The translations under genes were made by a program, and so were the position numbers. Under the pieces are notes generated by a model. It worked only from the letters and a program-made list of their open reading frames with translations, ran no database searches and was not told where the DNA came from. From Macrostomum hystrix (lineage: Eukaryota; Animalia; Platyhelminthes), in NCBI GenBank assembly GCA_950097015.1, contig CATNEN010000038.1:25048001-25112000 (forward strand): a stretch of DNA of 64,000 bases, written 5' to 3'. This document shows positions 8,932 to 41,947 of the stretch, piece after piece. Numbering within the stretch: the stretch's first letter is position 1; each line of letters begins with the position of its first letter.

Positions 8932-11900
8932 ATGACGTCAGGTGGTGGCGGAGCGGCCATCAAGATCGAGCATCGAGTTCAGGCCTGGCTGTCTGACAAC
9001 AAAAGCGGCGTTGAGCAACCGATATTCGGCTGCACCCAGCAGGCCCTGGCTCGTCAGGAGATCGTCCAAAAGGCGCTACTAACCCAGATTCACCGGCTGG
9101 AGCGACAGATTGAGCTGTCTAGCGAGAAGCTGACGGCCAGCTCAGCACAGCTTGAGCAAGCTCGCACAGAGGTCGGCCTCAACCAGGACGCCATCCGGTA
9201 TCTGGGCCGCATATCAGCCCTGGAGAATGTCTTCATGGAGGCAACCAATCAGGTGGCTGAGCAGGCTATCAGCCTGGCCCAGGTGCAGGACGATGTTGTC
9301 ATCGGTGGAAAGAAGGTCAGCAAGACGGCTTTTAGTCGGGAATTTATGTACTTAAGATGCGTTTTGCGTTTCTTTCATATCATAATTTTTAACTCCAATG
9401 CCACTGTAGACGACATAGATCAAAAACAGTCATTGAGGTCGATACCTTAAACATTGCTACTTCAGGTTGATACCTTAAACATTGCTACTTCAGGTTGATA
9501 CCTTACAGATTTATACTTGAGGTCGATACTTAAAATTTACTACTTGAGGTCGATACTTAAACATTTCTACTTCAGGTCGATACCTTAAAGATTACTACAT
9601 AAGGTCGATACCTTAAAGATTAGTACGTAAGGTCGATACTTTAAACATTACTTCTTGAGGTCGATACTTAAACATTTTTACTTGAGGTCGATACTTAAAA
9701 ATTACTACGTAAGGTCGATACCTTAAAGATTACTACGTAAGGTCGATATCTGAAAGATTACTACGTAAGGTAGATATCTGAAAGATTACTTCTTGAGGTC
9801 GATACTTAAACATTTTTACTTGAGGTCGATACTTAAAAATTACTACGTAAGGTCGATACTTTAAAGATTACTACGTAAGGTCGATACCTGAAAGATTACT
9901 ACTTGAGGTCGATACCTGAAAGATTACTACTTGAGGTCGATACCTTAAACATTACTACTTGAGGTCGATACCTTAAACATTACTTCTTGAAGCCTTAACC
10001 GTTAGTCCATAGGGTCAATACCTCAACATTTAGTTCGTGAGATCGATACCTTAACTCATTGTTCGTGATATCCATATTTTACCAATTTTTCGATATGTCG
10101 CAATTGCAAATTACCCATCAGATGCTTAGTGACGTGGTCACCCAAAGCTGGGACTGGGTCAGCAAGCTGGGCGAGCTAATGCAGTTGCACCTGAAGAACT
10201 CTGCTGACTACCACTCCTTCTACCACAATGCCAACGAGCTCGACGGCCTGTTGAACTCCCGTCGGGCCAACAACAGCCAACTAGTCGGCTCAATTCCGTC
10301 CAACGGCCTGCCCGCCTCCATGCATCGGATGAACACCGTGCTGGGCGTAAGTTTTGGCGATGCAACTACTGACTTAGTAGTATGGCGAACATGTCTGTTT
10401 TAAGCATATTGAAAATATGGTGGACTTTCACGAAACTCGGCTTAGCTAAACTATTACTGCGACCTTTGAGCACACGCATGCATACGTACTCAGGCACGTA
10501 CTCACGCAGGGGCGTGCATGTACATCCGCCCTGAATTTGCACCGCAGGACAACCTGTCCCAGTTCCTGTTTCTGTGGCAGCGCACGGACGACCTGGTGTC
10601 AAAGAGTCACAGCGTTGTCCCGGTGTATAGACGGACTCACCCCATCGATACCGGCTACCCGGGCCGCAATATTCATCGCTTCGACGATGGAGAGGTGAGC
10701 GCTTCTCTGATGCCTGCTCACTGGGTGTCGCAGAAATGTACTTTTGTTGCTTTTTTGTATCAAAATTAGTCTATTCTATTCACAGTGCGCCCCCGTTGAC
10801 TGGCTACCCCGTCCACGCAGTCAATAGATCTATTATCGATTTTTCGCCGATTCCCACTCGCTGCTAAACATCAACTTTCGTTCCCCTCCATCGGTTTCCT
10901 CAGCCTCATTGTCTCTCCGCTAAATGGACTCTCCTTTCAAACACAGCCTATCATATTTATCTAATAGTTAGTTTTTTATAACTGCTACATTTAATTCATT
11001 TAGTCAACCGGATCAGATATTTACTCTGCACTTTTCACTTCTTTAACTTAAATCTACGACATAGCTCGTAATTTGTCAGCTCACATTTTCCCTCATGATC
11101 CCCTATCCAAAAATATGATTCTCCATTATGATTCCTTATCTCTGATGTCTGATCCCGATCATGATCCCTTATCCCTGAAGTCTGATCCCAACCATGATCC
11201 CTTATCCCTGAAGTCAGATATATCCTGATCCCTTATCCCTGAGATCTGATCCCTATATGATCCCTTATCTATGATGTCTGATCCCGATCATGATCCCTTA
11301 TCCCTGAAGTCAGATCTATCATGATCCCTTATCCCTGAAGTCAGATCTATCATGATCCCTTATCCATGAAGTCAGTTCTATCCTGATCCCTTATCCCTGA
11401 AGTCAGATCTATCATGATCCCTTATCCCTGAAGTCAGATCTATCCTGATCCCTTATCCCTGAAGTCAGATCTATCATGATCTCTTATCCCTGAAGTCAGA
11501 TCTATCATGATCCCTTATCCCTGAAGTCAGATCTATCCTGATCCCTTATCCATGAAGTCAGTTCTATCCTGATCCCTTATCCCTGAAGTCAGAACTATCA
11601 TGATCCCTTATCCCTGAAGTCAGATCTATCCTGATCCCTTATCCCTGAAGTCAGATCTATCATGATCTCTTATCCCTGAAGTCAGATCTATCATGATCCC
11701 TTATCCCTGAAGTCAGATCTATCCTGATCCCTTATCCCTGAAGTCAGATCTATCCTGATCCCTTATCCATGAAGTCAGTTCTATCCTGATCCCTTATCCC
11801 TGAAGTCAGAACTATCAGGATCCCTTATCCCTGAAGTCAGATCTATCCTGATCCCTTATCAAGAAGTCAGATCGTCATTAATCCAGTTTTATCCCAACAA

Positions 11901-14528
11901 AAACCTGGCATAATTTCACAGAACGTACTGCAAGACGCCGAAGAGGTGACAGTGCTGGACAACTCGCATCCGCTCACCTGGCAGGTGAAGAAAGCCGATG
12001 GCACCGTGATGCAAGTGCCCAGTATTTGTATCTGGCTTCCGCCGCCAGACACTGAAGCCGTCGAAGTAGCTTATGCGTGAGTGATTGATTGATTTAGTTC
12101 TATAGAGCAATTCGAGATGGGATTACTGATGGATTCTCAAGTAATAATGGGAGTACTTGATTTCTAATCGATAAATATTACAATCGTGTAATATATAACT
12201 TTTCGTTATAAGCGTGCGTCGCAAGCTGCTAAACACGTGGGCCGCGTTGCTTAGCAAACTCCGCGTTTGGCTTGTGGACTTTTACACCAGCTACCTGCAA
12301 CTGCTGGGCAGCAGAACTGTGGTAAGCTGCTTCATTGCACCCGCTAGTTTTTTTAAAGCTGCCCATACAACTAACTCAATATGTCAGTAGAGTAGTTCGA
12401 GTTTTTTGTGACAAAATTTCAGCGAGTGAAAGCCAAAGTCCTGGCAGGATTCGAAGACTTTCTAAACCAGGTTGAGAAGGCCACAACGGATGTGTTCTCA
12501 GACACGGCTAATTGCTACCTTCTCTCGCAATCCATACGTGATGTGCGTGCCAACCTCACGCAGTGGCGTACGTAAAAATACACTGGCTGCATTTCAAAAT
12601 CCACTGTTATCCCAGTCCCTTCAAAGCATCCACTGTTACCCCAGTCCCTTCAAAGCATCCACTGTTACCCCAGTCCCTTCAAAGCATCCACTGTTACCCC
12701 AGTCCCTTCAAAGCATCCACTGTTACCCCAGTCCCTTCAAAGCATCCACTGTTACCCCAGTCCCTTCAAAGCATCCACTGTTACCCCAGTCCCTTCAAAG
12801 CTTCCACTGTTACCCCAGTCCCTTCAAAGCATCCACTGTTACCCCAGTCCCTTCAAAGCATCCACTGTTACCCCAGTCCCTTCAAAGCATCCACTGTTAC
12901 CCCAGTCCCTTCAAAGCATCCACTGTTACCCCAGTCCCTTCAAAGCTTCCACTGTTACCCCAGTCCCTTCAAAGCATCCACTGTTATCCCAGTCCCTTCA
13001 AAGCATCCACTGTTACCCCAGTCCCTTCAAAGCATCCACTGTTACCCCAGTCCCTTCAAAGCATCCACTGTTACCCCAGTCCCTTCAAAGCATCCACTGT
13101 TACCCCAGTCCCTTCAAAGCATCCACTGTTACCCCAGTCCCTTCAAAGCATCCACTGTTACCCCAGTCCCTTCAAAGCATCCACTGTTACCCCAGTCCCT
13201 TCAAAGCATCCACTGTTACCCCAGTCCCTTCAAAGCATCCACTGTTACCCCAGTCCCTTCAAAGCATCCACTGTTACCCCAGTCCCTTCAAAGCATCCAC
13301 TGTTATCCCAGTCCCTTCAAAGCATCCACTGTTACCCCAGTCCCTTCAAAGCATCCACTGTTACCACAGTCCCTTCAAAGCATCCACTGTTACCCCAGTC
13401 CCTTCAAAGCATCCACTGTTACCCCAGTCCCTTCAAAGCATCCACTGTTACCCCAGTCCCTTCAAAGCATCCACTGTTACCACAGTCCCTTCAAAGCATC
13501 CACTGTTACCCCAGTCCCTTCAAAGCATCCACTGTTACCCCAGTCCCTTCAAAGCATCCACTGTTACCCCAGTCCCTTCAAAGCATCCACTGTTACCCCA
13601 GTCCCTTCAAAGCATCCACTGTTATGCCAGTCCCTTTAAAGCATCCACTGTTACCCCAGTCCCTTCAAAGCATCCACTGTTATCCCAGTCCCTTTAAAGC
13701 ATCCACTGTTACCCCAGTCCCTTCAAAGCATCCACTGTTATCCCAGTCCCTTCAAAGCATCCACTGTTAAGCTAGTCCCTTCAATGCGTCAAATGTATTT
13801 TCCGATGAAGTCTTGAGTGTCATCCTCTAAGGCCCTTGACAACAGCAGATTCATATCTTTCTTTCGCTTTCCAGTCGGTGGTGACGAAGCACCATCCGTG
13901 AAGGAAAGCGAGGTGCCTTTGCTCCAATCTCTGCTAAGAAAACTGCTGGAGCACATGCGACACTGGAAGTACTTCAACGAGCAGATGGAATTTGCGCGCG
14001 ACGACAGACGCCAGCTGATGCAGGAGACTTCAAGAGTCATGAATGCCTTCCACACGCTCAGGTGTGAAACCGTTAAGCAAGCTTACTTAGCAGTATACGC
14101 TCGTACAATCTTAGCAAAAGTCAAAAGTAGTATCTATAACGAGAGGTGACTTGCTCTCACTGCTCTAACTCAAAAGCAAACAGCTTATTATTTTCTCCTG
14201 ACAAGGGAGCTGCATTTCTTCTCTAACAGTGACGTCGCGTTAGTCGTGATTAAACCACATAATTATGATAGATTTAAGGTAGAGAAAGTTCTCTTCAGGC
14301 TTCTTTTCGAGCATATAAGTGGCCACTCTATTTGGACATTTGAATTGTATATTTTTATTTTACTCAGAGACAGATTAAAATTTCCCCTTCATTCTTGTAC
14401 ACAGTCGCATACAGGATGAGAGTCGCTCCCAGCTAGAAGAGCTGCAGAACAAGATGGAGGAGTGGCGACTCTACACGCCAATGTCCGTGGAGTCTCGACG
14501 CTCGTCAACAATGCGAGTAGAAATGCTG
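8932..14528 (+). CDS. Plakin-domain (spectrin repeats + SH3 insert) N-terminus of a giant protein; exons 8932-9315, 10122-10346, 10548-10694, 11922-12076, 12213-12321, 12423-12567, 13875-14061, 14405-14528 (492 aa)
   Basis: All junctions are GT-AG and phase-compatible. VTQSWDWVSKLGELMQLHLKNSADYHSFYHNANE matches plectin/dystonin [38 protein letters not shown]...EEVTVLDNSHPLTWQVKKADGTVMQVPSICIWLPPPDTEA matches the plakin SH3 (..SHWKV..VPSVCFLVPPPNQEA). Confidence 0.85.
9430..9990. repeat. Intronic minisatellite, 27-28 bp unit
   Basis: gaggtcgataccttaaacattactactt repeated about 20 times in plakin intron 1. Confidence 0.95.
11090..11872. repeat. Intronic minisatellite, 31 bp unit
   Basis: gatcccttatccctgaagtcagatctatcat repeated about 24 times. 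Confidence 0.95.
12598..13785. repeat. Intronic minisatellite, 29 bp unit
   Basis: catccactgttaccccagtcccttcaaag repeated about 40 times, starting ~30 bp after the donor at 12568. Confidence 0.97.
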
Positions 14529-14752
14529 GTAAGTTATTTTTGCAGCGCAATTTTCGCTTCAGAGTCCCATTTAGAGTCTGATAATCTGTCAATCAAAATT
14601 ATGCGCGCAATTACAAATCAACAACTTACGAGTATATAATGCATTTTCCGCATAAATATTTTTTCGCATATTTAGAAAATATTTCTTTCGATTTCTACGC
14701 TCTTTCTATGCTACAGCCTTTGGCTTTTACAATGTCAACAAACAACTTGCAG

Positions 14753-17700
14753 GAAGTTGCTCAAAAACTCCAGGAGGAGGAGGTAAACTCCACTAGCACC
14801 CTAGCGGGTGAAGACTCTGAACAAGTCGACAGGACGGCGGACATTGTTTTCGAGGGAGGCGGCGGCGACAGAGATAGAGACTGGCAACTCTCCGAATGGT
14901 TAGGCAGCCTGCAATCCAAAAGCATTGAGGCCGCCTGTCAAACGGATTGGACTGTCAGTGACGAGAGAGCGCAGGGTGCTATCGAGCGCGCCAGGCACGA
15001 TCAGAGTGTCTCCACCCAGTCCGAGAAGGTCATCATAGTCGAAGAGAAACGGCTGGCTCCAACCCCCAGCAACTGGGTTAGCGCATACTCTGAGTATAGA
15101 AACCCGGGTCACAGAGTGACTGAGGATCGATCCGTTAGACAGCTGGTGTACAACTATATCGAAGAAAATGCCAGAGAAGTGAAGTCCTATCTGCACCAGC
15201 ATCATCCAGAGCTAATTGTGAATTCCACTTCAATGCATTCTCACCACACGCTGATTGTCAATAGCGGCGCTGCTGGCGGTATCGAAGCTGCCGAACGGGA
15301 CTTGGTGGATGCCGTGTTTCGACAACAGCAAAGGACGACGCCAAAAGCAACAGGCACCGAGGAAGCTATGGTGGTCGCACGGCCCAGCACCAGAGGAAGA
15401 GGTCTGCAGACAGTGCAAGAAAGAGAAATACCACTGATATCAAACTCCTTAGTGGCATTTGAGGTGCCGATTCTGACAACTCTTCTGGATGTGCGAGTTG
15501 ACACTAGCGACTCAGGGAATCAAACAGTGTGGTCAAAGATCAGTCATACCGAGTGCAGTGCCGAATTGCTCACACAGAGCACTGCCGTCGCGTGGCATCC
15601 ATTGCTGACAGCCAACGGACATGGAGTGTTTCAAGAAATCGACACAGCGACTACGCTAGCTCAAACAAAAAAAGACCTTAACGTTAGCGGAAGCGGCGTA
15701 TACAGAGAAGTCAGACTAGAAAACAACTGCATGGCCGCTGAACCCCTCTGTTTCACTGCCATCGTGCAAACAGATGCTCCGATTGCCGCCGCCAACGCCG
15801 TGTACTTAGAAGTCGAGTATAAGACTACTACGATTGAGTTCGCAGCAGCGCAAACACGAGAGGCCGCATTGCAAACCTCAGCAAGTGTGTACAACAGTAC
15901 AAATTGCAGTGGTGAGCTTCGCTACCTCAATAGCGATGTTCAAAAGCGCGAAGACTTAGTAAAAACTCACGCAACCGAAGCGAGTCAAGAAACTTTGGCA
16001 AGATCGGCTCGAATAGATGCAAAGCCGCAAATTTCTACAGCTAGCATAAAATTTTCGCCAACAGTCACAAGCTCGGGTGTCTACCAGGAATTAAAAATGA
16101 AACAAGAAAATGTGCTCGCGAAAAAAGATTTCCTAATCAGTGCAACGCAAAGCAGCATAGAGATAAAAACTGAAGCCGCTTTAGTTGCAGCGAAACAGGA
16201 CCTAACTTCAACAGGAGCACACAAAGAATTCCAAAGTCAAGACAGTTGCATTCACTGGCAATTCAAAAACAAAACAGCTACAACAACGGCGCACCATACT
16301 TCCCAAATGATCGAGGCAAAGATAAACGTTTACCAGACAACTTCAGCAACACAAGCATCCAGGGAAACACAATACCTTGACTGTGCAGTAAAATCAGAAA
16401 CAAGAAGTGGTGACGCAATTGTATGCGTCAAACAAGCGATAACAGCCATGGGAGTCTACGATCAAATAGACACAGACACAGCATCAGTGACGAAAAAAAG
16501 CGATATTGCTGTAGCATCAACCCAATGCCACAGGGAAACCCATCTCATTGAAAGAAAAGCTATGTTTCGGAACAACATTAAACTCACAAGCAGTGGCGTC
16601 TTCAGAGAGATGAGGCTACAGAATGGCAGAGCGCAGTTCAAGGAAGAAGTCGCCGTGACCGCTAGCGGATGCTTCAAAGAGTCACATCTGAGCGAGAGCA
16701 GAGCGCAGTTCAAGGAAGAAGTCGCTGTGACGAGCAGTGGCGTCTTCAGAGAGATGAGCCTCAACGAGAGCCGAGTGCAGTTCAAGGAGGAGATCGCCGT
16801 CACTGGAAGCGGCTGCTTCAAAGAACAAGCGTATGCGCAGAGCCAGGTGCAGCACGGAGAGATCATCGAGGTCAGTGCCACAGGCTGCTACAAAGAGTCA
16901 CATCTGAGCGAGAGCAGAGCGCAGTTCAAGGAAGAAGTCGCCGTGACCGCTAGCGGATGCTTCAAAGAGTCACATCTGAGCGAGAGCAGAGCGCAGTTCA
17001 AGGAAGAAGTTGCTGTGACGAGCAGTGGCGTCTTCAGAGAGATGAGCCTCAACGAGAGCCGAGTGCAGTTCAAGGAGGAGATCGCCGTCACTGGAAGCGG
17101 CTGCTTCAAAGAACAAGCGTATGCGCAGAGCCAGGTGCAGCACGGAGAGATCATCGAGGTCAGTGCCACAGGCTGCTTCAAAGAGTCAAATCTGAGCGAG
17201 AGCAGAGTGCAGTTCAAGGAAGAAGTCGCTGTGACGAGCAGTGGCGTCTTCAGAGAGATGAGCCTCAACGAGAGCCGAGTGCAGTTCAAGGAGGAGATCG
17301 CCGTCACTGGAAGCGGCTGCTTCAAAGAACAAGCGTATGCGCAGAGCCAGGTGCAGCACGGAGAGATCATCGAGGTCAGTGCCACAGGCTGCTTCAAAGA
17401 GTCAAATCTGAGCGAGAGCAGAGTGCAGTTCAAGGAAGAAGTCGCTGTGACGAGCAGTGGCGTCTTCAGAGAGATGAGCCTCAACGAGAGCCGAGTGCAG
17501 TTCAAGGAGGAGATCGCCGTCACTGGAAGCGGCTGCTTCAAAGAACAAGCGTATGCGCAGAGCCAGGTGCAGCACGGAGAGATCATCGAGGTCAGTGCCA
17601 CAGGCTGCTTCAAAGAGTCAAATCTGAGCGAGAGCAGAGTGCAGTTCAAGGAAGAAGTCGCTGTGACGAGCAGTGGCGTCTTCAGAGAGATGAGCCTCAA

Positions 17701-26700: not shown

Positions 26701-29700
26701 AGCGCAGTTCAAGGAAGAAGTCGCTGTGACGAGCAGTGGCGTCTTCAGAGAGATGAGCCTCAACGAGAGCCGAGTGCAGTTCAAGGAGGAGATCGCCGTC
26801 ACTGGAAGCGGCTGCTTCAAAGAACAAGCGTATGCGCAGAGCCAGGTGCAGCACGGAGAGATCATCGAGGTCAGTGCCACAGGCTGCTTCAAAGAGTCAC
26901 ATCTGAGCGAGAGCAGAGCGCAGTTCAAGGAAGAAGTCGCCGTGACCGCTAGCGGATGCTTCAAAGAGTCACATCTGAGCGAGAGCAGAGCGCAGTTCAA
27001 GGAAGAAGTCGCTGTGACGAGCAGTGGCGTCTTCAGAGAGATGAGCCTTAACGTGAGCCGAGTGCAGTTCAAGGAGGAGATCGCCGTCAGTGGAAGCGGA
27101 TGCTTCAAAGAACAAGCGTATGCGCATAGTCAGGTGCAGCACGGAGAGATCATCGAGGTCAGTGCAACAGGCTGCTTCAAAGAGTCACATCTGAGCGAGA
27201 GCAGAGCGCAGTTCAAGGAAGAAGTCGCCGTGACCGCTAGCGGATGCTCCAAAGAGTCACATCTGAGCGAGAGCAGAGCGCAGTTCAAGGAAGAAGTCGC
27301 TGTGACGAGCACTGGCGTCTTCAGAGAGATGAGCCTTAACGTGAGCCGAGTGCAGTTCAAGGAGGAGATCGCCGTCAGTGGAAGCGGCTGCTTCAAAGAA
27401 CAAGCGTATGCGCATAGTCAGGTGCAGCACGGAGAGATCATCGAGGTCAGTGCAACAGGCTGCTTCAAAGAGTCACATCTGAGCGAGAGCAAAGCGCAGT
27501 TCAAGGAAGAAGTCGCCGTGACCGCTAGTGGATGTTTCAAAGAGTCACATCTGAGCGAGAGCAGAGCGCAGTTCAAGGAAGAAGTCGTTGTGACGAGCAG
27601 TGGCGTCTTCAGAGAGATGAGCCTCAACGAGAGCAGAGTGCAGTTCAAGGAGGAGATCGCCGTCACTGGAAGCGGCTGCTTCAAAGAACAAGCGTATGCG
27701 CAGAGCCAGGTGCAGCACGGAGAGATCATCGAGGTCAGTGCCACAGGCTGCTTCAAAGAGTCACATCTGAGCGAGAGCAGAGCGCAGTTCAAGGAAGAAG
27801 TCGCTGTGACGAGCAGTGGCGTCTTCAGAGAGATGAGCCTCAACGAGAGCCGAGTGCAGTTCAAGGAGGAGATCGCCGTCACTGGAAGCGGCTGCTTCAA
27901 AGAACTAGCGTATGCGCAGAGCCAGGTGCAGCACGGAGAGATCATCGAGGTCAGTGCCACAGGCTGCTTCAAAGAGTCACATCTGAGCGAGAGCAGAGCG
28001 CAGTTCAAGGAAGAAGTCGCCGTGACCGCTAGCGGATGCTTCAAAGAGTCACATCTGAGCGAGAGCAGAGCGCAGTTCAAGGAAGAAGTCGCTGTGACGA
28101 GCAGTGGCGTCTTCAGAGAGATGAGCCTTAACGTGAGCCGAGTGCAGTTCAAGGAGGAGATCGCCGTCAGTGGAAGCGGCTGCTTCAAAGAACAAGCGTA
28201 TGCGCATAGTCAGGTGCAGCACGGAGAGATCATCGAGGTCAGTGCAACAGGCTGCTTCAAAGAGTCACATCTGAGCGAGAGCAAAGCGCAGTTCAAGGAA
28301 GAAGTCGCCGTGACCGCTAGTGGATGTTTCAAAGAGTCACATCTGAGCGAGAGCAGAGCGCAGTTCAAGGAAGAAGTCGCTGTGACGAGCAGTGGCGTCT
28401 TCAGAGAGATGAGCCTCAACGAGAGCAGAGTGCAGTTCAAGGAGGAGATCGCCGTCACTGGAAGCGGATGCTTCAAAGAACTAGCCTATGCGCAGAGCCA
28501 GGTGCAGCACGGAGAGATCATCGAGGTCAGTGCCACAGGCTGCTTTAAAGAATCACATCTGAGCGAGAGCAGAGCGCAGTTCAAGGAAGAAGTCGCTGTG
28601 ACGAGCAGTGGCGTCTTCAGAGAGATGAGCCTCAACGAGAGCAGAGTGCAGTTCAAGGAGGAGATCGCCGTCACTGGAAGCGGATGCTTCAAAGAACTAG
28701 CCTATGCGCAGAGCCAGGTGCAGCACGGAGAGATCATCGAGGTCAGTGCCACAGGCTGCTTTAAAGAATCACATCTGAGCGAGAGCAGAGCGCAGTTCAA
28801 GGAAGAAGTCGCTGTGACGAGCAGTGGCGTCTTCAGAGAGATGAGCCTCAACGAGAGCCGAGTGCAGTTCAAGGAGGAGATCGCCGTCACTGGAAGCGGC
28901 TGCTTCAAAGAACAAGCGTATGCGCAGAGCCAGGTGCAGCACGGAGAGATCATCGAGGTCAGTGCCACAGGCTGCTTCAAAGAGTCACATCTGAGCGAGA
29001 GCAGAGCGCAGTTTAAGGAAGAAGTCGCCGTGACCGCTAGCGGATGCTTCAAAGAGTCACATCTGAGCGAGAGCAGAGCGCAGTTCAAGGAAGAAGTCGC
29101 TGTGACGAGCAGTGGCGTCTTCAGAGAGATGAGCCTCAACGAGAGCAGAGTGCAGTTCAAGGAGGAGATCACCGTCACTGGAAGCGGCTGCTTCAAAGAA
29201 CTAGCGTATGCGCAGAGCCAGGTGCAGCACGGAGAGATCATCGAGGTCAGTGCCACAGGCTGCTTTAAAGAGTCACATCTGAGCGAGAGCAGAGCGCAGT
29301 TCAAGGAAGAAGTCGTTGTGACGAGCAGTGGCGTCTTCAGAGAGATGAGCCTCAACGAGAGCAGAGTGCAGTTCAAGGAGGAGATCGCCGTCACTGGAAG
29401 CGGATGCTTCAAAGAACTAGCGTATGCGCAGAGCCAGGTGCAGCACGAAGAGATCATCGAGGTCAGTGCAACAGGCTGCTTCAAAGAGTCACATCTGACC
29501 GAGAGCAGAGCGCAGTTCAAGGAAGAAGTCGCCGTGACCGCTAGCGGATGCTTCAAAGAGTCACATCTGAGCGAGAGCAGAGCGCAGTTCAAGGAAGAAG
29601 TCGCTGTGACGAGCAGTGGCGTCTTCAGAGAGATGAGCCTCAACGAGAGCAGAGTGCAGTTCAAGGAGGAGATCACCGTCACTGGAAGCGGCTGCTTCAA

Positions 29701-32700
29701 AGAACTAGCGTATGCGCAGAGCCAGGTGCAGCACGGAGAGATCATCGAGGTCAGTGCCACAGGCTGCTTTAAAGAATCACATCTGAGCGAGAGCAGAGCG
29801 CAGTTCAAGGAAGAAGTCGCTGTGACGAGCAGTGGCGTCTTCAGAGAGATGAGCCTCAACGAGAGCCGAGTGCAGTTCAAGGAGGAGATCGCCGTCACTG
29901 GAAGCGGCTGCTTCAAAGAACAATCGTATGCGCAGAGCCAGGTGCAGCACGGAGAGATCATCGAGGTCAGTGCCACAGGCTGCTTCAAAGAGTCACATCT
30001 GAGCGAGAGCAGAGCGCAGTTTAAGGAAGAAGTCGCCGTGACCGCTAGCGGATGCTTCAAAGAGTCACATCTGAGCGAGAGCAGAGCGCAGTTCAAGGAA
30101 GAAGTCGCTGTGACGAGCAGTGGCGTCTTCAGAGAGATGAGCCTCAACGAGAGCAGAGTGCAGTTCAAGGAGGAGATCGCCGTCACTGGAAGCGGATGCT
30201 TCAAAGAACAAGCGTATGCGCAGAGCCAGGTGCAGCACGGAGAGATCATCGAGGTCAGTGCCACAGGCTGCTTCAAAGAGTCACATCTGAGCGAGAGCAA
30301 AGCGCAGTTCAAGGAAGAAGTCGCTGTGACCGCTAGCGGATGCTTCAAAGAGTCACATCTGAGCGAGAGCAGAGCGCAGTTCAAGGAAGAAGTCGCTGTG
30401 ACGAGCAGTGGCGTCTTCAGAGAGATGAGCCTCAACGAGAGCAGAGTGCAGTTCAAGGAGGAGATCACCGTCACTGGAAGCGGCTGCTTCAAAGAACAAG
30501 CGTATGCGCAGAGCCAGGTGCAGCACGGAGAGATCATCGAGGTCAGTGCCACAGGCTGCTTCAAAGAATCACATCTGAGCGAGAGCAGAGCGCAGTTCAA
30601 GGAAGAAGTCGCCGTGACCGCTAGTGGATGTTTCAAAGAGTCACATCTGAGCGAGAGCAGAGCGCAGTTCAAGGAAGAAGTCGCTGTGACGAGCACTGGC
30701 GTCTTCAGAGAGATGAGCCTCAACGAGAGCAGAGTGCAGTTCAAGGAGGAGATCGCCGTCACTGGAAGCGGATGCTTCAAAGAACAAGCGTATGCGCAGA
30801 GCCAGGTGCAGCACGGAGAGATCATCGAGGTCAGTGCCACAGGCTGCTTCAAAGAGTCACATCTGAGCGAGAGCAAAGCGCAGTTCAAGGAAGAAGTCGC
30901 TGTGACCGCTAGCGGATGCTTCAAAGAGTCACATCTGAGCGAGAGCAGAGCGCAGTTCAAGGAAGAAGTCGCTGTGACGAGCACTGGCGTCTTCAGAGAG
31001 ATGAGCCTTAACGAGAGCCGAGTGCAGTTCAAGGAGGAGATCGCCGTCAGTGGAAGCGGATGCTTCAAAGAACAAGCGTATGCGCAGAGCCAGGTGCAGC
31101 ATGGAGAGATCATCGAGGTCAGTGCCACAGGCTGCTTCAAAGAGTCACATCTGAGCGAGAGCAGAGCGCAGTTTAAGGAAGAAGTCGCCGTGACCGCTAG
31201 CGGATGCTTCAAAGAGTCACATCTGAGCGAGAGCAGAGCGCAGTTCAAGGAAGAAGTCGCTGTGACGAGCAGTGGCGTCTTCAGAGAGATGAGCCTCAAC
31301 GAGAGCCGAGTGCAGTTCAAGGAGGAGATCGCCGTCACTGGAAGCGGATGCTTCAAAGAACAAGCGTATGCGCAGAGCCAGGTGCAGCACGGAGAGATCA
31401 TCGAGGTCAGTGCCACAGGCTGCTTTAAAGAATCACATCTGAGCGAGAGCAGAGCGCAGTTCAAGGAAGAAGTCGCTGTGACGAGCAGTGGCGTCTTCAG
31501 AGAGATGAGCCTCAACGAGAGCAGAGTGCAGTTCAAGGAGGAGATCGCCGTCACTGGAAGCGGATGCTTCAAAGAACTAGCGTATGCGCAGAGCCAGGTG
31601 CAGCACGGAGAGATCATCGAGGTCAGTGCAACAGGCTGCTTCAAAGAGTCACATCTGAGCGACAGCAGAGCGCAGTTCAAGGAAGAAGTCGCCGTGACCG
31701 CTAGTGGATGTTTCAAAGAGTCACATCTGAGCGAGAGCAGAGCGCAGTTCAAGGAAGAAGTCGCTGTGACGAGCACTGGCGTCTTCAGAGAGATGAGCCT
31801 CAACGAGAGCAGAGTGCAGTTCAAGGAGGAGATCGCCGTCACTGGAAGCGGATGCTTCAAAGAACAAGCGTATGCGCAGAGCCAGGTGCAGCACGGAGAG
31901 ATCATCGAGGTCAGTGCCACAGGCTGCTTCAAAGAGTCACATCTGAGCGAGAGCAAAGCGCAGTTCAAGGAAGAAGTCGCTGTGACCGCTAGCGGATGCT
32001 TCAAAGAGTCACATCTGAGCGAGAGCAGAGCGCAGTTCAAGGAAGAAGTCGCTGTGACGAGCAGTGGCGTCTTCAGAGAGATGAGCCTCAACGAGAGCCG
32101 AGTGCAGTTCAAGGAGGAGATCGCCGTCACTGGAAGCGGATGCTTCAAAGAACAAGCGTATGCGCAGAGCCAGGTGCAGCACGGAGAGATCATCGAGGTC
32201 AGTGCCACAGGCTGCTTTAAAGAATCACATCTGAGCGAGAGCAGAGCGCAGTTCAAGGAAGAAGTCGCTGTGACGAGCAGTGGCGTCTTCAGAGAGATGA
32301 GCCTCAACGAGAGCAGAGTGCAGTTCAAGGAGGAGATCGCCGTCACTGGAAGCGGATGCTTCAAAGAACTAGCGTATGCGCAGAGCCAGGTGCAGCACGG
32401 AGAGATCATCGAGGTCAGTGCAACAGGCTGCTTCAAAGAGTCACATCTGAGCGACAGCAGAGCGCAGTTCAAGGAAGAAGTCGCCGTGACCGCTAGTGGA
32501 TGTTTCAAAGAGTCACATCTGAGCGAGAGCAGAGCGCAGTTCAAGGAAGAAGTCGCTGTGACGAGCAGTGGCGTCTTCAGAGAGATGAGCCTCAACGAGA
32601 GCCGAGTGCAGTTCAAGGACGAGATCGCCGTCACTGGAAGCGGCTGCTTCAAAGAACAAGCGTATGCGCAGAGCCAGGTGCAGCACGGAGAGATCATCGA

Positions 32701-34488
32701 GGTCAGTGCCACAGGCTGCTTCAAAGAGTCAAATCTGAGCGAGAGCAGAGTGCAGTTCAAGGAAGAAGTCGCTGTGACGAGCAGTGGCGTCTTCAGAGAG
32801 ATGAGCCTTAACGAGAGCCGAGTGCAGTTCAAGGAGGAGATCGCCGTCAGTGGAAGCGGATGCTTCAAAGAACAAGCGTATGCGCATAGTCAGGTGCAGC
32901 ACGGAGAGATCATCGAGGTCAGTGCCACAGGCTGCTTCAAAGAGTCACATCTGAGCGAGAGCAGAGCGCAGTTCAAGGAAGAAGTCGCTGTGACGAGCAG
33001 TGGCGTCTTCAGAGAGATGAGCCTCAACGAGAGCCGAGTGCAGTTCAATGAGGAGATCGCCGTCACTGGAAGCGGCTGCTTCAAAGAACAAGCGTATGCG
33101 CAGAGCCAGGTGCAGCATGGAGAGATCATCGAGGTCAGTGCCACAGGCTGCTTCAAAGAGTCACATCTGAGCGAGAGCAGAGCGCAGTTTAAGGAAGAAG
33201 TCGCCGTGACCGCTAGCGGATGCTTCAAAGAGTCACATCTGAGCGAGAGCAGAGCGCAGTTCAAGGAAGAAGTCGCTGTGACGAGCAGTGGCGTCTTCAG
33301 AGAGATGAGCCTCAACGAGAGCCGAGTGCAGTTCAAGGAGGAGATCGCCGTCAGTGGAAGCGGCTGCTTCAAAGAACAAGCGTATACGCAGAGCCAGGTG
33401 CAGCACGGAGAGATCATCGAGGTCAGTGCCACAGGCTGCTTCAAAGAGTCACATCTGAGCGAGAGCAAAGCGCAGTTCAAGGAAGAAGTCGCCGTGACCG
33501 CTAGCGGATGCTTCAATGAGTCACATCTGAGCGAGAGCAGAGCGCAGTTCAAGGAAGAAGTCGCCGTGACCGCTAGAGGATGCTTCAAAGAGTCACATCT
33601 GAGCGAGAGCAGAGCGCAGTTCAAGGAAGAAGTCGCTGTGACGAGCAGTGGCGTCTTCAGAGAGATGAGCCTCAACGAGAGCCGAGTGCAGTTCAAGGAG
33701 GAGATCGCCGTCACTGGAAGCGGCTGCTTTAAAGAACAAGCGTATGCGCAGAGCCAGGTGCAGCACGGAGAGATCATCGAGGTCAGTGCCACAGGCTGCT
33801 TCAAAGAGTCACGTCTGAGCGAGAGCAGAGCGCAGTTCAAGGCAGAGCATTTTCGGGTTCAAGAGATGTTGAAAAGGGTTGTTGTTGAGTCGTCAGGTTG
33901 TTCGCGAGAGATTAACATTGCTGAAAGCTTGATTTTGTGTCACTCTCTAGTGTGCAAGGATTGCTTCGCTTTTTCTACTGAGAATGTTGCGTCCGGAAAC
34001 GCTATTCGTGATTATGTTGACGCCTCTGTGCTCGCGAGGTTTTTCGTCAGTGAGAGCGGTGCTGAATGCATTAAGAAACAGTTTAGCCGGAGCACTCAGA
34101 TTAGTGTGTCCATCGCTGTTGAAAGCGGGACATACTTCGAGGCACCTTCGCCGTTAGAGTCTCAGATAGATGAAGTAAGTCGCGGGGCGTCGTTTACATT
34201 TGCCGGTATGTCTGTTAGTGAGAATTCAGTCGGACGCCTTGATTCAGCTGATTCGGCAGGATTCCCTCGACGCACCGTAGCCTCAACATTTAGCCGGCCT
34301 TCACTGGCATCCATTTCGATTTCGGAGACCGGGGCCGAGGGACTTGTTCCGCCTGATCTGCTGCCGTGGCCTGGTGTGCAGCACGACGAAGCAATTACTG
34401 AATCAGAAGTACAGACGGACACAGAGTCGGAAGCTGACTTTCTGGGCATGGCGGAGCGATACCATGTTGGAAAGATTTATGGCTTTAG
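14753..34488 (+). CDS. Giant ~19.7-kb coding exon of the same gene (~6,580 aa, ~230 tandem 24-aa repeats)
   Basis: Uninterrupted ORF 14639..34558. A phase-0 acceptor ttgcag|GAA at 14753 (alternative ctacag| at 14717, also in frame) fits the phase-0 donor at 14528. Donor TTTAG|gtacgt at 34488 is phase 2. Confidence 0.85.
16580..21650 (+). repeat. Coding 72-nt tandem array 1 (~70 units; 216-nt higher-order trimer)
   Basis: Units AVTSSGVFREMSLNESRVQFKEEI / AVTGSGCFKEQAYAQSQVQHGEII / EVSATGCFKESHLSESRAQFKEEV / AVTASGCFKESHLSESRAQFKEEV. Confidence 0.97.
22105..33845 (+). repeat. Coding 72-nt tandem array 2 (~163 units)
   Basis: Same four unit types as array 1; includes a near-exact 2160-nt (30-unit) tandem duplication. 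Confidence 0.97.
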
Positions 34489-34721
34489 GTACGTCTTTTT
34501 GGGGAAATACTGGAACTACTTTTACTGGAACTTTTATGTGCTATTAACACAAGGATGAAATTTTTTCTGGTAGTTGTTTTAAGTCTGTATGAAGCTAATG
34601 TGTATGTTACTTTTGCAAACAATTCGCCTGCGGTTATTCTTTTTTATCTTTCTGCTTCATATAGTTGGTAAACTTTTTTAATTATTCAAAGATTAACCCT
34701 CAAAATCTCTGTGCCACTAAG

Positions 34722-35520
34722 GCTGGATCATCTAAGCCGCCACAGGAGTGATGCTTCTGCGCAGACGGATTTGAAGCACAATTCTACAATCTGGCGCATG
34801 CTTCGACTGCAAGAGGGAAATTTCGAATTCGATGTACGCACAATGGTCAAGGTCATTGGAGCTGATAGCTTTGCCCAAGTTATTCGCCAGTTGAGACATG
34901 TCGCCGACGCCAGTGTGCAGACACTGTCAACCGACGATCAACAGCAACAGCAGGAACTGCGCCTCAGTGGCCAATGGCGTTTCGAAGCTGAGGACGGTTC
35001 CGTGCTGCTGGGCGAAAGAGGCAGCGTTGTCATCTCGCAGACAAATGTCGAACGTTACGTTCCTTCTAGGCCGACGTCTGTGGCATCGTCAGTTGCCGGA
35101 GACGATCTGGCTGAGGACCAGATAATGTCGCTCTTCCAGCAGCATCACGGCTCACTACATCATTCGCAGCATCTACATCAACAGCATCAGCATCACCAGC
35201 AGCATCAGCAGCAGCAGCAGCAGCAGCAATATCCTCATCCAGTCAACCTTCTAAGCCCACCGATGGCGACGTCTACCGGAAGTCAGTTGCTATCGCCATC
35301 AATTCATCTGCGACCACGTCCAATAAGCGGCTTCGGCACCGGGAGCTACGAGCCTATGCCGCCGCAACAGCTTCACAGCCATTTTCATTTCCAGCAGCAG
35401 CCGCAATCGCTGCAGACACCAACAATCACCGGGCAACAGCCACTTCACCATCAACCTAGCGGCGCCGTGACACCGCAGTCTGCCCGGATGACAACTGGTC
35501 GGCAAACGAGAACTGGACAG
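34722..35520 (+). CDS. Next exon of the giant gene: QT motifs followed by a Q/H/P-rich low-complexity tail; 3' end uncertain (further short exons possible at ~35630 and ~35795)
   Basis: Acceptor ctaag|G CTG GAT completes the phase-2 AG|G Arg codon; matches ORF 34711..35562. Candidate donors at 35520 and ~35550. Confidence 0.75.
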
Positions 35521-40325: not shown

Positions 40326-40484
40326 GTAAATATTAATTATTTGATATTGAATGTACCCCACATCATTATCAGACCATCCTTGATGGTTTCAGTTGGCTAG
40401 CGAAGTTGACGATTTGTTGCGTCACAGTGATGTCATCAGTCCAACCAATGACAATTTTGAAGTCATCGTAGGACATAGAAGACT

Positions 40485-41060
40485 TTGGCTGTCTGATGGA
40501 ATTCGGTCCAAGAAGTGGCTGTCTGATGGAATCCGATCAAAGAAGTGGCTGTCTGATGGAATCCGTTCCAAGAAGTGGCTGTCTGATGGAATCCGATCAA
40601 AGAAGTGGCTGTCTGATGTAATTCGGTCCAAGAAGTGGCTGTCTGATGGAATCCGATCAAAGAAGTGGCTTTCTGATGGAATCCGGTCCAAGAAATGGCT
40701 GTCTGATGGAATCCGTTCTAAGAAGTGGCTGTCTGATGGAATCCGGTCCAAGAAGTGGCTGTCTGATGGAATCCGGTCCAAGAAGTGGCTGTCTGATGGA
40801 ATCCGGTCCAAGAAATGGCTGTCTGATGGAATCCGTTCTAAGAAGTGGCTGTCTGATGGAATCCGGTCCAAGAAGTGGCTGTCTGATGGAATCCGGTCCA
40901 AGAAGTGGCTGTCTGATGGAATCCGGTCCAAGAAGTGGCTGTCTGATGGAATCCGGTCCAAGAAGTGGCTGTCTGATGGAATCCGGTCCAAGAAGTGGCT
41001 GTTTGATGGAATCCGGTCCAAGAAGTGGCTGTCTGATGGAATCCGGTCCAAGAAGTGACT
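40485..41060. repeat. Minisatellite, 30 bp unit
   Basis: tggctgtctgatggaatccggtccaagaag repeated about 19 times. Confidence 0.97.
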
Positions 41061-41427
41061 GTCTGTCGATGAAGCTATCAAAGGAATCCTGTTGAAAACA
41101 TTATATTCTGATACGGGTTTCTATATTCTTAGTAAAACGTACTGCTAAGTAACAAAGGTAACTCAAAACATCTACAGGAAACAGCATCGCCCTCTGAGCA
41201 GAAAACCTGATTTAATAGCTTGTAAGTTACTTTGTCTGCAGTCTTAGTAAAAAACAAAAATAAATTGAATCACCAATTGTGGCATCAGAAACTGGCAACA
41301 TACTTTGCTGATTTGGCAAATAAACTAGGCGATACAGCAAGAGAATAGTTATGAAATAATGTATTTATTAAAACAAAACAGTAAAAAAAATTGGTTGCGG
41401 ATTAAAAATCTTTGATCTTTAATTTGA

Positions 41428-41815
41428 ATTGAGTAGGGATTGGGAAGCTGGGATCTGTGATGACTTGAGTAGGGATTGGGAAGCTGGGATCTGTGATGAC
41501 TTGAGTAGGGATTGGGAAGCTGGGATCTGTGATGACTTGAGTAGGGATTGGGAAGCTGGGATCTGTGATGACTTGAGTAGGGATTGGGAAGCTGGGAACT
41601 GTGATGACTTGAGTAGGGATTGGGAAGCTGGGATCTGTGATGACTTGAGTAGGGATTGGGAAGCTGGGATCTGTGATGATTTGAGTAGGGATTGGAAAGC
41701 TGGGATCTGTGATGATTTGAGTAGGGATTGGGAAGCTGGGATCTGTGATGATTTGAGTAGGTATTGAGAAGCTGGGATCTGTGATGATTTGAGTAGGTAT
41801 TGAGAAGCTGGGATC
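41428..41815. repeat. 36-bp satellite, copy 1
   Basis: ttgagtagggattgggaagctgggatctgtgatgat repeated about 11 times. Confidence 0.97.
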
Positions 41816-41947
41816 TATATTCACTAAACGCATTGGCCAATCAGGCAAGCATTCAAGACTTGACAACTGGCCTAGAGTCTGTTGGCAGCAACAGAGTCAT
41901 TTTCGCAGCGGCATCCTCTTGTAGTTTAACCCAGGAATAGGCGAACA
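41811..41947 (-). pseudogene. Duplicated 3' fragment of SLC35E3 (last ~31 codons, stop and start of 3' UTR)
   Basis: Identical by eye to 47382-47518. Confidence 0.9.

What the first reader, a model, noticed from the sequence alone, without database searches (positions are those of the whole stretch)
8932..35520. Plakin head spliced to a ~20-kb exon of 24-aa repeats: candidate new giant cytolinker/filament protein (~7,300+ aa)
Seen: eight small exons encoding an SH3-containing plakin domain splice in frame onto the 6,639-aa ORF, which the ORF track shows as an orphan. Known: plakins and spectraplakins continue into coiled-coil or spectrin rods and end in plakin-repeat domains or EF-hand/GAS2 modules, and many start with CH domains. 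None of these is recognisable here. The rod is replaced by ~230 non-helical-looking 24-mers and a Q/H/P tail. Inference: a lineage-specific junction-anchored tether or filament of very great length, for example in epidermal, anchor-cell or muscle-attachment cytoskeleton. I do not recognise this architecture.
Basis: partly seen in the sequence, partly recalled or inferred. Interest (0 to 1): 0.92.

Follow-up and report, generated by a model that had tools for sequence, protein, structure and literature searches.

The report
Flatworm giant plakin with beta-repeat rod
A Macrostomum flatworm gene really does splice a plakin-type (junction-anchoring) head onto a 20-kb exon of about 235 nearly identical 24-residue units. 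The product is an expressed, roughly 7,350-residue protein whose rod matches no described domain, and it belongs to a flatworm-specific group of similar giants that nobody has studied.

Summary
Eight small exons (8932-14528, 492 codons) encode a divergent plakin domain. It carries the plakin SH3 (Pfam SH3_10, E 1.5e-9) and aligns with plectin and desmoplakin SR4-SR5.

Transcriptome contigs from four runs of one study match the window with no mismatches. They join 12567|13875, 14061|14405 and 14528|14753, so the head is spliced to the 6,639-codon ORF.

The rod holds 235 canonical 24-mers. They are almost free of Pro and Asp, have beta-type hydrophobic periodicity, and are predicted at low confidence to form a beta-solenoid. 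No Pfam family matches them.

In 1.84 billion representative proteins the only true relatives are uncharacterised, fragmentary Macrostomum lignano models with the same architecture. No paper mentions them.

The gene is not unique in its genome. At least six other plakin-SH3 loci carry a giant ORF just downstream, with different repeats. Two of these were noted earlier by this scan on other DNA. Two canonical spectraplakins lie elsewhere.

Best reading: a lineage-specific, plakin-anchored cytoplasmic rod or tether. The architecture and the head-to-ORF splicing are shown. The last splice and the ~7,350-residue total are modelled, not read from transcripts. The fold, the cell type and the function are inferred. 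This is a new variant of a known kind. Interest 0.62.

The parts
8932..9315 (+). Exon 1 (start codon; 128 codons; N-terminal helical part of the plakin head)
   Evidence: Collinear with M. lignano P0001 residues 1-127. The donor is AAG|GTCAGC. It is conserved in three paralogues. A stop lies 42 nt upstream in frame. There is no signal-peptide-like hydrophobic start.
10122..10346 (+). Exon 2 (plakin spectrin-repeat SR4-like)
   Evidence: Aligns with desmoplakin 174-216 and plectin 92-132. It is 64-66% identical to the C38 paralogues. Splice sites are shown.
10548..10694 (+). Exon 3 (end of SR4 and first half of the SH3 region)
   Evidence: 94% identical to P0001 residues 201-249. On the spliced orthologue the SH3_10 profile is matched in full, 1-65.
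11922..12076 (+). Exon 4 (second half of the plakin SH3 domain)
   Evidence: Pfam SH3_10, E 1.5e-9. PDB plectin 3pe0, E 4.6e-4, and desmoplakin 3r6n.
12213..12321 (+). Exon 5 (helix after the SH3, SR5)
   Evidence: 89% identical to P0001. Conserved in all three paralogues.
12423..12567 (+). Exon 6
   Evidence: 83% identical to P0001. Its 3' end, 12538-12567, is the loose end of the transcript contigs that continue at 13875.
13875..14061 (+). Exon 7
   Evidence: Covered by the contigs of four runs. The joint to 14405 has GT..AG borders.
14405..14528 (+). Exon 8 (last head exon; ends ...RVEML)
   Evidence: 100% identical to P0001 residues 448-489. The joint 14528|14753 is seen in four runs.
14753..34488 (+). 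Giant exon (19,736 nt; 6,578 codons plus 2 nt)
   Evidence: Uninterrupted ORF. Transcripts enter it at 14753 and cover it, mismatch-free, as far as the laid stretch reaches (16500) and on into the first repeats. The donor is TTTAG|GTACGT.
14753..16528 (+). Non-repetitive and degenerate-repeat N-terminal part of the giant exon. It contains the motif SAYSEYR...RQLVYNYIEENAREVKSYLH, which the paralogues share.
   Evidence: 64% identical to P0001. The motif is conserved in C38 genes A and B and is present several times in the C7 gene. No Pfam match.
16529..33860 (+). Array of about 235 canonical 24-residue units in four types. V4, G8, F10, E12, S18, Q21 and E24 are near-invariant. Position 9 is Cys in 165 units and Val in 70.
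   Evidence: Among distinct variants between copies, 25 are synonymous and 38 non-synonymous, against about 20% synonymous expected at random.
33861..34488 (+). Post-repeat Ser/Glu-rich segment
   Evidence: 55% identical to M. lignano P0002 residues 99-214.
34722..35562 (+). Last exon. It holds a conserved roughly 50-residue motif (QTDLKHNSTIWRML...VIRQLRHVA, 34762 to about 34932), then a Q/H/P-rich low-complexity tail and the stop.
   Evidence: 62% identical to P0002. The motif is shared only with the C7 paralogue and its M. lignano orthologue. The AF2 model of it is uninformative, pLDDT 46.

Best explanation
This is a genuine, transcribed gene of a Macrostomum flatworm. The species is not M. 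lignano itself. The predicted protein has about 7,350 residues (roughly 0.8 MDa) and no signal peptide.

Its 492-residue head is a divergent, shortened plakin domain: spectrin-like repeats with the embedded plakin SH3. In characterised plakins this module docks the protein at cell junctions and membrane adhesion complexes.

Plakins normally continue into a coiled-coil or spectrin rod with plakin-repeat or GAS2 ends. Here the head continues into about 235 near-identical 24-residue units. They most likely fold as stacked beta rungs, a beta-solenoid of about 0.48 nm per unit, which would give a rod of roughly 110-125 nm. The protein ends in a short conserved motif and a Q/H/P-rich tail.

The proposed mechanism is a plakin-anchored, stiff, acidic cytoplasmic rod or tether with ladders of Cys, Gln, Lys and Glu along its surface. 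It would space or link a junctional or membrane site to another cytoskeletal or matrix partner.

Shown: gene structure, head-to-giant-exon splicing, expression, the plakin identity of the head, the restriction to Macrostomum, and membership of a group of at least seven similar loci in the genome. Inferred: the last splice (34488|34722), the beta-solenoid fold, junctional anchoring, and the tether role.
For: - **Gene and splicing.** The ORF and the array are present. Spliced, mismatch-free contigs from four runs join E6|E7|E8|giant exon. They carry about 1,335 nt upstream of E7, which is the whole head plus about 170 nt of 5' UTR.
- **Plakin head.** SH3_10 hits the window exon at E 1.5e-9 and the orthologue over profile positions 1-65 at E 5.5e-11. 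A paralogue's M. lignano orthologue (P0025) aligns collinearly with desmoplakin 176-372 (E 2.3e-8) and plectin 88-277 (E 5.2e-8). The best non-Macrostomum relatives of the head are dystonin/MACF1/Shot-type spectraplakins, at 25-27% identity and E 1e-12 to 3e-9.
- **Family context.** The same head-exon order lies directly upstream of a giant repeat ORF at C7 and twice at C38:23.1 Mb. A giant ORF also follows the SH3 exon at C3, C34 and C39.
- **Orthologues.** The M. lignano models P0001, P0020, P0002, P0006 and P0021 show the same layout.
- **Beta rod.** Pro is 0.1% and Asp 0.2% of the rod. Gly8 is invariant. The hydrophobic moment is enriched at 160-180 degrees (about +12 to +19 SD against shuffles) and depleted at 100 degrees. 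The AF2 model is all-beta, and its best structural neighbours are right-handed beta-helices (Z 17, rmsd 2.6 A over 195 residues).
- **Selection.** Variants between repeat copies show an excess of synonymous changes.
- **Not an isoform of a spectraplakin.** No CH, Spectrin, Plectin or GAS2 match lies in the locus, and the canonical spectraplakins are on C2 and C39.
Against: - The AF2 model is of low confidence (mean pLDDT 61; the other four models score 38-50). AF2 is also prone to build solenoids from any 20-25-residue repeat.
- The Foldseek search found nothing at E below 0.1.
- The short-read contigs collapse about 175 nt into the array, so transcription of the full 17-kb array and the copy number of 235 rest on the genome assembly alone.
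- The 3' junction was not seen in reads.
- No known cytoskeleton-binding module is present at the far end. The tail fold is unresolved.
- No tissue, localisation or protein-level data exist.
- S plus E make up 29% of the rod, so partial disorder remains possible.
Confidence: 0.6

Rival explanations
1. The architecture is the same, but the rod is not a folded solenoid. It is a largely disordered or reversibly unfolding, acidic Ser/Glu-rich chain. It would act as an entropic spring or a very long flexible tether (up to about 2 um if extended), or as a multivalent scaffold that binds one partner per unit.
For: S plus E make up 29% of the rod. AF2 confidence is low. Paralogues carry quite different repeats (46-, 57- and about 50-residue units) behind the same head. 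That fits rods whose bulk properties matter more than a precise fold. An earlier scan note reads another paralogue as a multivalent binding array.
Against: Pro is nearly absent (0.1%). Hydrophobic residues make up 38% of the rod. Gly, Phe and Val positions are invariant. The strong beta-type amphipathic periodicity is atypical of disordered linkers. The units are net acidic, which argues against tau- or nebulin-like binding to microtubules.
Confidence: 0.22
2. The protein is a building block of a cross-linked intracellular structure rather than a linker between two sites. Examples would be the epidermal terminal web, the anchor-cell core, or the intracellular hard parts of the copulatory organ. 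Like envoplakin and periplakin in the vertebrate cornified envelope, it would be recruited by its plakin head. It would then be fixed through its ladders of Cys (disulfides) or Gln/Lys (transglutaminase).
For: Q21 is near-invariant. Position 11 is Lys in 161 units and Arg in 72; position 23 is Lys in 167 units. Cys9 is present in 165 of 235 units. Cys and Gln recur in the paralogues' repeats. Rapid, concerted evolution of the rods is typical of structural matrix proteins. From general knowledge, periplakin and envoplakin are head-only plakins that become cross-linked.
Against: This rests on composition only. The position of Cys shifts between paralogues. No expression site is known, and no transglutaminase link was tested.
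Confidence: 0.13
3. The array is an assembly-inflated or non-translated satellite that happens to stay open, or the product is secreted (an adhesive or matrix protein) rather than cytoplasmic.
For: The copies are 95-99% identical at the DNA level, which makes the assembly of the copy number uncertain. Macrostomum does make giant repetitive secreted adhesive proteins (PMC6410801, from its abstract).
Against: A 19.9-kb open frame is present, and unit spacing is kept at exactly 72 nt in 230 of 234 cases. There is a synonymous excess. Transcripts run from the head into the array. M. lignano models also carry at least 90 units in frame. The N-terminus has no signal peptide, and the head is a cytoplasmic plakin domain.
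Confidence: 0.05

Closest known systems
Macrostomum lignano gene models PAA91320.1 (BOX15_Mlig024865g2, partial), UniProt A0A1I8I886, A0A1I8GFV0 and A0A1I8F6F1
   Same: These are orthologues. The head is 83-100% identical in exons 3-8 and about 66-77% in exons 1-2. The splice ...RVEML|EVAQKLQEEE is the same. They have the same unique region (64% identity), the same 24-mers (FKEEIAVTGSGCFRETSYNESRVR), and the same tail motif and Q/H-rich end.
   Different: The models are fragmentary or chimeric: one is fused to a retrotransposon ORF, and others are cut inside the array. They are named only 'hypothetical' or 'SH3_10 domain-containing'. No paper in the searchable library mentions them. The window gives the first uninterrupted full-length model.
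Periplakin and envoplakin (vertebrate head-only plakins)
   Same: The plakin domain with SH3 sits at the N-terminus with no calponin-homology actin-binding domain. A long rod follows, then a short C-terminal module.
   Different: Their rods are heptad coiled coils, and their tails are the IF-binding linker or plakin-repeat domain. Here the rod is beta-type 24-mers and no linker or PRD is detectable. The head is closer to spectraplakin heads than to these proteins.
Giant-exon isoforms of spectraplakins (Drosophila Shot plakin-repeat exon, PMC2173965; C. elegans VAB-10A)
   Same: The plakin head is joined to one very large exon of tandem repeats. The proteins are invertebrate epithelial cytolinkers.
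   Different: Those exons encode 38-residue plakin repeats (Pfam Plectin) and are alternative parts of a CH/spectrin/GAS2 gene. This locus has none of those domains, and the two canonical spectraplakins of the genome lie on C2 and C39.
AHNAK/desmoyokin
   Same: It resembles this protein in design: a small N-terminal domain, one giant exon of beta-strand-prone repeats and a short tail, with a location at the cell cortex and junctions (general knowledge).
   Different: No sequence relationship was found in 1.84 billion proteins. AHNAK has 128-residue units and a PDZ head, not a plakin head.
Beta-helical repeat proteins (bactofilin, left-handed beta-helix proteins, SufBD-type and pectate-lyase-type beta-helices)
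   Same: The only non-Macrostomum sequences with a 24-residue periodic match (P0005 and P0007, E about 1e-11 and 3e-10) carry Bactofilin or LbH/Hexapep signatures. The AF2 model superposes on beta-helices at Z 13-17.
   Different: These are probably analogues, not homologues. Repeat queries inflate summed scores, as the spurious Pfam sums show. No eukaryotic cytoplasmic beta-helix of this length is known.

Membership tests
Plakin family (plakin-domain proteins) | SH3 domain of the plakin type embedded in a spectrin-like repeat (SR5) | tested here: met
   Pfam SH3_10 hits the window exon 4 at E 1.5e-9. On the spliced orthologues P0001, P0006 and P0025 the full profile 1-65 is matched at E 5.5e-11 to 2e-10. 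The plectin and desmoplakin SH3 regions align.
Plakin family (plakin-domain proteins) | Flanking spectrin-like repeats collinear with SR4-SR5 of solved plakin domains | tested here: met
   Exon 2 aligns with desmoplakin 174-216 and plectin 92-132. P0025 residues 133-328 align with desmoplakin 176-372 and plectin 88-277 at E about 1e-8. The head hits dystonin/MACF1 at E 1e-12. Only about four repeats fit into 492 residues, so the domain is shortened. Pfam Spectrin itself does not hit.
Plakin family (plakin-domain proteins) | Intermediate-filament-binding plakin-repeat domain or linker at the C-terminus (present in most but not all plakins) | tested here: not met
   No PF00681 hit lies in the window. 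The hits in the genome are on C39, C2 and C1 only. Pfam finds nothing on the tail.
Plakin family (plakin-domain proteins) | Alpha-helical rod (coiled coil or spectrin repeats) | tested here: not met
   The hydrophobic moment is depleted at 100 degrees and enriched at 160-180 degrees. The AF2 model is all-beta. There are no Spectrin hits.
Spectraplakins (Shot/VAB-10/MACF1/dystonin) | CH-domain actin-binding domain, spectrin-repeat rod, EF-hands and a GAS2/GAR domain in the same gene | tested here: not met
   No CH, Spectrin or GAS2 hit lies in C38:25,048,001-25,112,000. The transcript starts about 170 nt upstream of the ATG. The next genes downstream are on the opposite strand.
Beta-solenoid / beta-helix repeat proteins | One repeat forms one coil of stacked parallel beta strands with a hydrophobic core and a conserved turn glycine | tested here: inconclusive
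   The AF2 model is all-beta at pLDDT 61 and pTM 0.63. VIA-align gives Z 17 to beta-helices, but Foldseek gives E above 0.1. The sequence periodicity supports beta structure. An experiment is needed.
AHNAK family | Sequence homology of the repeat units or the PDZ head | tested here: not met
   No AHNAK-like protein is among the 18 hits of the exhaustive HMMER search.

The most novel reading that the evidence does not exclude
Macrostomid flatworms have evolved a new class of cytoskeletal element. It is a radiation of plakin-anchored giant proteins whose rods are cytoplasmic beta-solenoids more than 100 nm long. This one would have about 235 rungs, the longest predicted beta-helix in any eukaryotic intracellular protein. 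Such rods would replace the alpha-helical rods used by all characterised plakins.
Probability: 0.3. Interest if true: 0.85.

Novelty: new variant of a known kind. Interest (0 to 1): 0.62.

Why it matters
All characterised plakins and spectraplakins use alpha-helical rods (coiled coil or spectrin repeats) and a small set of end modules. This gene keeps the anchoring head but replaces everything else with a repeat that has no described family.

The same genome holds at least seven loci of this head-plus-giant-ORF design, each with a different repeat. That shows the plakin head can serve as a general anchor for newly evolved giant rods. It also points to uncharted cytoskeletal or structural biology in flatworms, in the epidermis, the adhesive anchor cells or the intracellular hard parts.

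M. lignano has working RNAi, in situ hybridisation and transgenesis, so the question can be tested directly. If the rod is a real beta-solenoid, it would also be an unusual natural nanorod of defined length.

The window supplies a complete, uninterrupted gene model where the public M. lignano models are broken.

Tried and rejected
1. A search for long relatives of the giant ORF's first 700 residues among proteins of 3,650-11,600 aa found nothing.
2. A head search among proteins of 600-1,900 aa found only M. lignano proteins.
3. Pfam on the repeats gave only spurious summed hits with zero significant stretches, such as Tet_res_leader and eRF1_2. These were rejected as repeat artefacts.
4. The ESM Atlas search gave scores of 0.87 or less with recognition far below threshold, so it was uninformative.
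5. The AF2 model of the conserved tail reached pLDDT 46, so no fold could be called.
6. Foldseek on the rod model found nothing at E of 0.001 or below.
7. The ANKRD26-like and other low-complexity hits of the exhaustive search (P0004, P0008, P0010, P0016) were judged coiled-coil or low-complexity noise.
8. Literature searches for Macrostomum with plakin, desmoplakin, plectin and related terms, for flatworm plakins, and for the M. lignano gene and protein identifiers found nothing relevant. The supplements of two M. lignano papers held no occurrence either.
It was repeated on 13790-16500.
Exons were searched one by one by reference, and whole-head searches used the M. lignano proteins returned by the tools.
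Full report

Yes. The window holds one open frame from 14639 to 34558, 6,639 codons long. Tandem Repeats Finder reports a single array at 16589-33846 with periods of 216 and 288 nt, which are 3 and 4 times 72 nt.

Translation gives four near-identical 24-residue unit types:
- EVAVTASGCFKESHLSESRAQFKE
- EVAVTSSGVFREMSLNESRVQFKE
- EIAVTGSGCFKEQAYAQSQVQHGE
- IIEVSATGCFKESHLSESRAQFKE

Anchoring on the conserved G-[CV]-[FYS]-x-E motif finds 235 units, and 230 of the 234 spacings are exactly 24 residues. V4, G8, F10, E12, S18, Q21 and E24 are almost invariant. Position 9 is Cys in 165 units and Val in 70.

Distinct nucleotide variants between copies are 25 synonymous against 38 non-synonymous. About 20% synonymous would be expected from random change, so the copies are under some purifying selection.

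**2. The head.**

Stop-free segments upstream encode eight exons. I placed their borders in two ways: by collinearity with the Macrostomum lignano protein P0001, and by GT..AG sites.

| Exon | Coordinates |
|---|---|
| E1 | 8932-9315 |
| E2 | 10122-10346 |
| E3 | 10548-10694 |
| E4 | 11922-12076 |
| E5 | 12213-12321 |
| E6 | 12423-12567 |
| E7 | 13875-14061 |
| E8 | 14405-14528 |

The lengths sum to 1,476 nt, which is 492 codons with compatible phases.

Exon 4 matches Pfam SH3_10, the plakin SH3, at E 1.5e-9. It also matches the SH3 region of plectin (3pe0) and desmoplakin (3r6n). Exon 2 aligns with the preceding spectrin-like repeat of the same two structures.

For whole-head tests I used M. 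lignano proteins that the tools returned:
- SH3_10 is matched over its whole profile (positions 1-65) at E 5.5e-11 to 2e-10.
- P0025 aligns collinearly with desmoplakin 176-372 and plectin 88-277 at E about 1e-8.
- The head region of P0020 finds dystonin/MACF1/Shot-type spectraplakins and desmoplakin at 24-27% identity, E 1.4e-12 to 9e-6.

The head is therefore a real but divergent and shortened plakin domain.

**3. Are head and giant exon one gene?**

Yes, on three independent lines of evidence.

(a) Transcripts. Four public runs of one study hold 76% of the sampled words of 13800-16600, which is about its exonic share. Each run has only 43-50 million letters of contigs, so the runs are transcriptomes by inference. 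Their contigs, laid on 13790-16500, have no mismatches. They show the joints 14058|14402 (GT..AG with the cut 3 nt further right, i.e. 14061|14405) and 14527|14752 (cut 1 nt further right, i.e. 14528|14753). The contigs' upstream loose end is identical to window 12538-12567, so E6 is joined to E7 as well. One contig carries 1,335 nt upstream of E7. That is the 1,165 nt of E1-E6 coding sequence plus about 170 nt of leader, so no CH-domain exons lie upstream in this mRNA.

(b) Orthology. The M. lignano models P0001 (PAA91320.1), P0019 and P0020 read ...RVEML|EVAQKLQEEE... across the same junction and continue into 24-mers.

(c) Paralogy. The same order of head exons lies immediately upstream of a giant repeat ORF at three other loci of this genome: C7:1.124-1.137 Mb, C38:23.110-23.125 Mb and C38:23.130-23.158 Mb.

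The 3' junction 34488|34722 has a good donor (TTTAG|GTACGT) and a good acceptor. It reproduces the ...GFR...QTDL... sequence of the M. lignano model P0002.

With that junction the protein has 492 + 6,578 + 1 + 279 = 7,350 residues.

**4. What is absent?**

Pfam finds nothing else on any exon, on the unique part of the giant exon, or on the tail. On the repeats it gives only summed-score artefacts with no significant stretch.

Whole-genome scans put no CH, Spectrin, Plectin-repeat or GAS2 match inside the window. Two canonical spectraplakin genes with the CH - plectin repeats - spectrin repeats - GAS2 layout lie at C2:0.43-0.48 Mb and at C39:9.35-9.42 Mb.

Downstream of 35562 the next ORFs are on the minus strand. 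The gene is therefore not an isoform of a spectraplakin.

**5. Organism and distribution.**

An exhaustive HMMER search of 1.84 billion representative proteins used 900 residues spanning the degenerate and the canonical repeats. It returned only 18 hits.

The real relatives are all M. lignano proteins: P0001 (E 2.9e-123), P0002, P0003, P0006 and P0013. They are named 'hypothetical', 'SH3_10 domain-containing' or similar. The window therefore comes from a Macrostomum species other than M. lignano. The head is mostly 83-100% identical and the unique region 64% identical, and the genome is 220 Mb.

The remaining hits are low-complexity or coiled-coil noise, apart from two proteins with 24-residue periodic repeats that carry Bactofilin or LbH/Hexapep signatures.

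Full-text searches found no paper linking Macrostomum or flatworms with plakins. They also found no mention of the M. lignano identifiers.

**6. A family, not a singleton.**

The genome has 12 SH3_10 loci. Besides the four with 23-24-residue-type repeats, three more have a giant ORF on the same strand just downstream of the SH3 exon:
- C3: at least 6,037 codons, running off the fetched DNA.
- C34: 2,259 plus 1,470 codons, with repeats of about 50 residues.
- C39: 2,447 codons.

One locus (C37) does not, and four could not be fetched. For C3, C34 and C39 I saw only the SH3 hit and the nearby ORF; their full heads, splicing and expression were not examined.

Two earlier first-stage notes of this scan describe such paralogues on other DNA of the same genome. 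I had found the first of them (gene A, 46-residue units) independently.

The rods differ in sequence. The 24-mer query does not hit the C3, C34 or C39 ORFs. The conserved tail motif QTDL..S..W.M..L..G is shared only with the C7 gene. The motif SAYSEYR...LVYNYIEE..EVK.YLH at the start of the giant exon is shared with the C38 genes, and a related F..V..YVEEH..EF motif occurs several times in the C7 gene.

**7. How it probably works.**

The N-terminus has no signal peptide and the head is a cytoplasmic docking module, so the protein is intracellular (inference from family knowledge).

The rod is nearly free of Pro (0.1%) and Asp (0.2%). It is 38% hydrophobic and has an invariant Gly in each unit. 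Its hydrophobic moment is far below shuffled controls at the alpha-helical angle (0.63 against 0.90). At 160-180 degrees it is far above them (1.07-1.12 against 0.80-0.90). That indicates amphipathic beta strands and argues against a coiled coil.

AlphaFold2 was run on ten units with a seven-row alignment of paralogous repeats. It gives an all-beta model with turns at the S-S-G motif, with mean pLDDT 61 and pTM 0.63. Foldseek finds nothing significant. VIA-align places the model among right-handed beta-helices: SufBD-type at Z 17.0 with rmsd 2.6 A over 195 residues, then adhesins, pectate lyases and tailspikes at Z 13-17.

Taken together this favours one unit forming one rung of a beta-solenoid. 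At 0.48 nm per rung, about 235-260 rungs would give a stiff rod of roughly 110-125 nm. The rod would be net acidic and would carry ladders of Cys, Gln, Lys and Glu.

This is an inference of moderate strength only. AF2 tends to build solenoids from such repeats, and four of its five models were poor.

The tail motif could not be folded (pLDDT 46), so the partner at the far end is unknown.

My best reading is a plakin-anchored rod or tether. The rivals are a disordered spring or multivalent scaffold, or a cross-linked structural matrix protein in the manner of envoplakin and periplakin. A secreted product or an untranslated satellite is unlikely.

**8. Comparison and novelty.**

The protein qualifies as a plakin by its head. 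It fails every test for the rest of the known architectures: no alpha-helical rod, no plakin repeats or linker, and no CH, EF-hand or GAS2 domains.

In design it resembles AHNAK, but without homology. It also resembles the giant plakin-repeat exons of Shot and VAB-10, but with an unrelated repeat and as a separate gene.

Orthologues are already in public databases, but only as broken, unnamed models, and nothing has been published on them. I therefore rate it a new variant of a known kind.

The claim of an orphan, singular architecture is tempered, and the cellular role is untested.

**9. Limits.**

- Only short-read-derived contigs from one study were available.
- The array itself and the 3' junction are not covered by transcripts.
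- The copy number rests on the assembly.
- There are no tissue or protein data.

Noticed in passing
window 9433-9990, 11128-11873, 12599-13784: Introns 1, 3 and 6 of the gene are filled with minisatellites of 28-31-bp units, with 20-41 copies at 86-97% matches. The paralogous genes on C7 and C38 also carry intronic minisatellites. The array at 12599-13784 made read laying refuse the first request.
   Followed up: partly
G000 C3:9602918-9622916+, C34:5587628-5601863, C39:10045627-10037098 (loci L019-L030): Three further plakin-SH3 loci have a giant ORF just downstream on the same strand: at least 6,037 codons, 2,259 plus 1,470 codons, and 2,447 codons. Their repeats are unrelated to the 24-mer. 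Together with the window gene, C7 and two C38 genes, at least 7 of the 12 SH3_10 loci have this layout.
   Followed up: partly
G000 C7:1129717-1136176; C38:23114174-23125349; C38:23139129-23158251 (loci L013, L010-L017): Unlike the window gene, each of the three closest paralogues has its giant repeat region split into two overlapping or adjacent open frames. These could be frameshifts, short introns or assembly errors inside the arrays. Which of these applies was not resolved.
   Followed up: no
protein P0020 (M. lignano UniProt A0A1I8I886): This 4,429-residue public gene model is a chimera. Its first roughly 1,620 residues are retrotransposon-like (RNase H and reverse-transcriptase-like sequence), fused in frame to the plakin head and about 90 24-mers with scattered frame errors.
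   Followed up: partly
G000 C2:432732-477397 (+) and C39:9354635-9421613 (-): There are two canonical spectraplakin loci with CH, Plectin-repeat, Spectrin and GAS2 matches in the expected order. The C39 copy has a highly regular plectin-repeat array with hits every 150 nt.
   Followed up: no
window 40393-41866, 45326-47437, 50219-51358, 52504-52908, 56998-58099: There are large minisatellite blocks downstream of the gene, several sharing the same unit (read on the minus strand as ...PSFPIPTQIITD...). They explain the strong GC-skew spikes in the composition profile.
   Followed up: no
window 47424-48365 (-), 49795-50250 (-), 53064-53642 (-), 56557-57117 (-): These are minus-strand ORFs of neighbouring genes. 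One is a 313-residue multi-pass membrane protein that looks like a solute or sugar-nucleotide transporter. One is a 151-residue ORF. Two are exons with Kelch-like motifs (LYIFGG/MYVFGG). They were named by eye only and not searched.
   Followed up: no
window 16888-21621 (-), 28702-32868 (-) and other long antisense or off-frame ORFs: ORFs of up to 1,577 codons on the opposite strand and in other frames of the array are by-products of the repeat. A stop-free unit copied many times stays stop-free. They are not evidence of further genes.
   Followed up: partly
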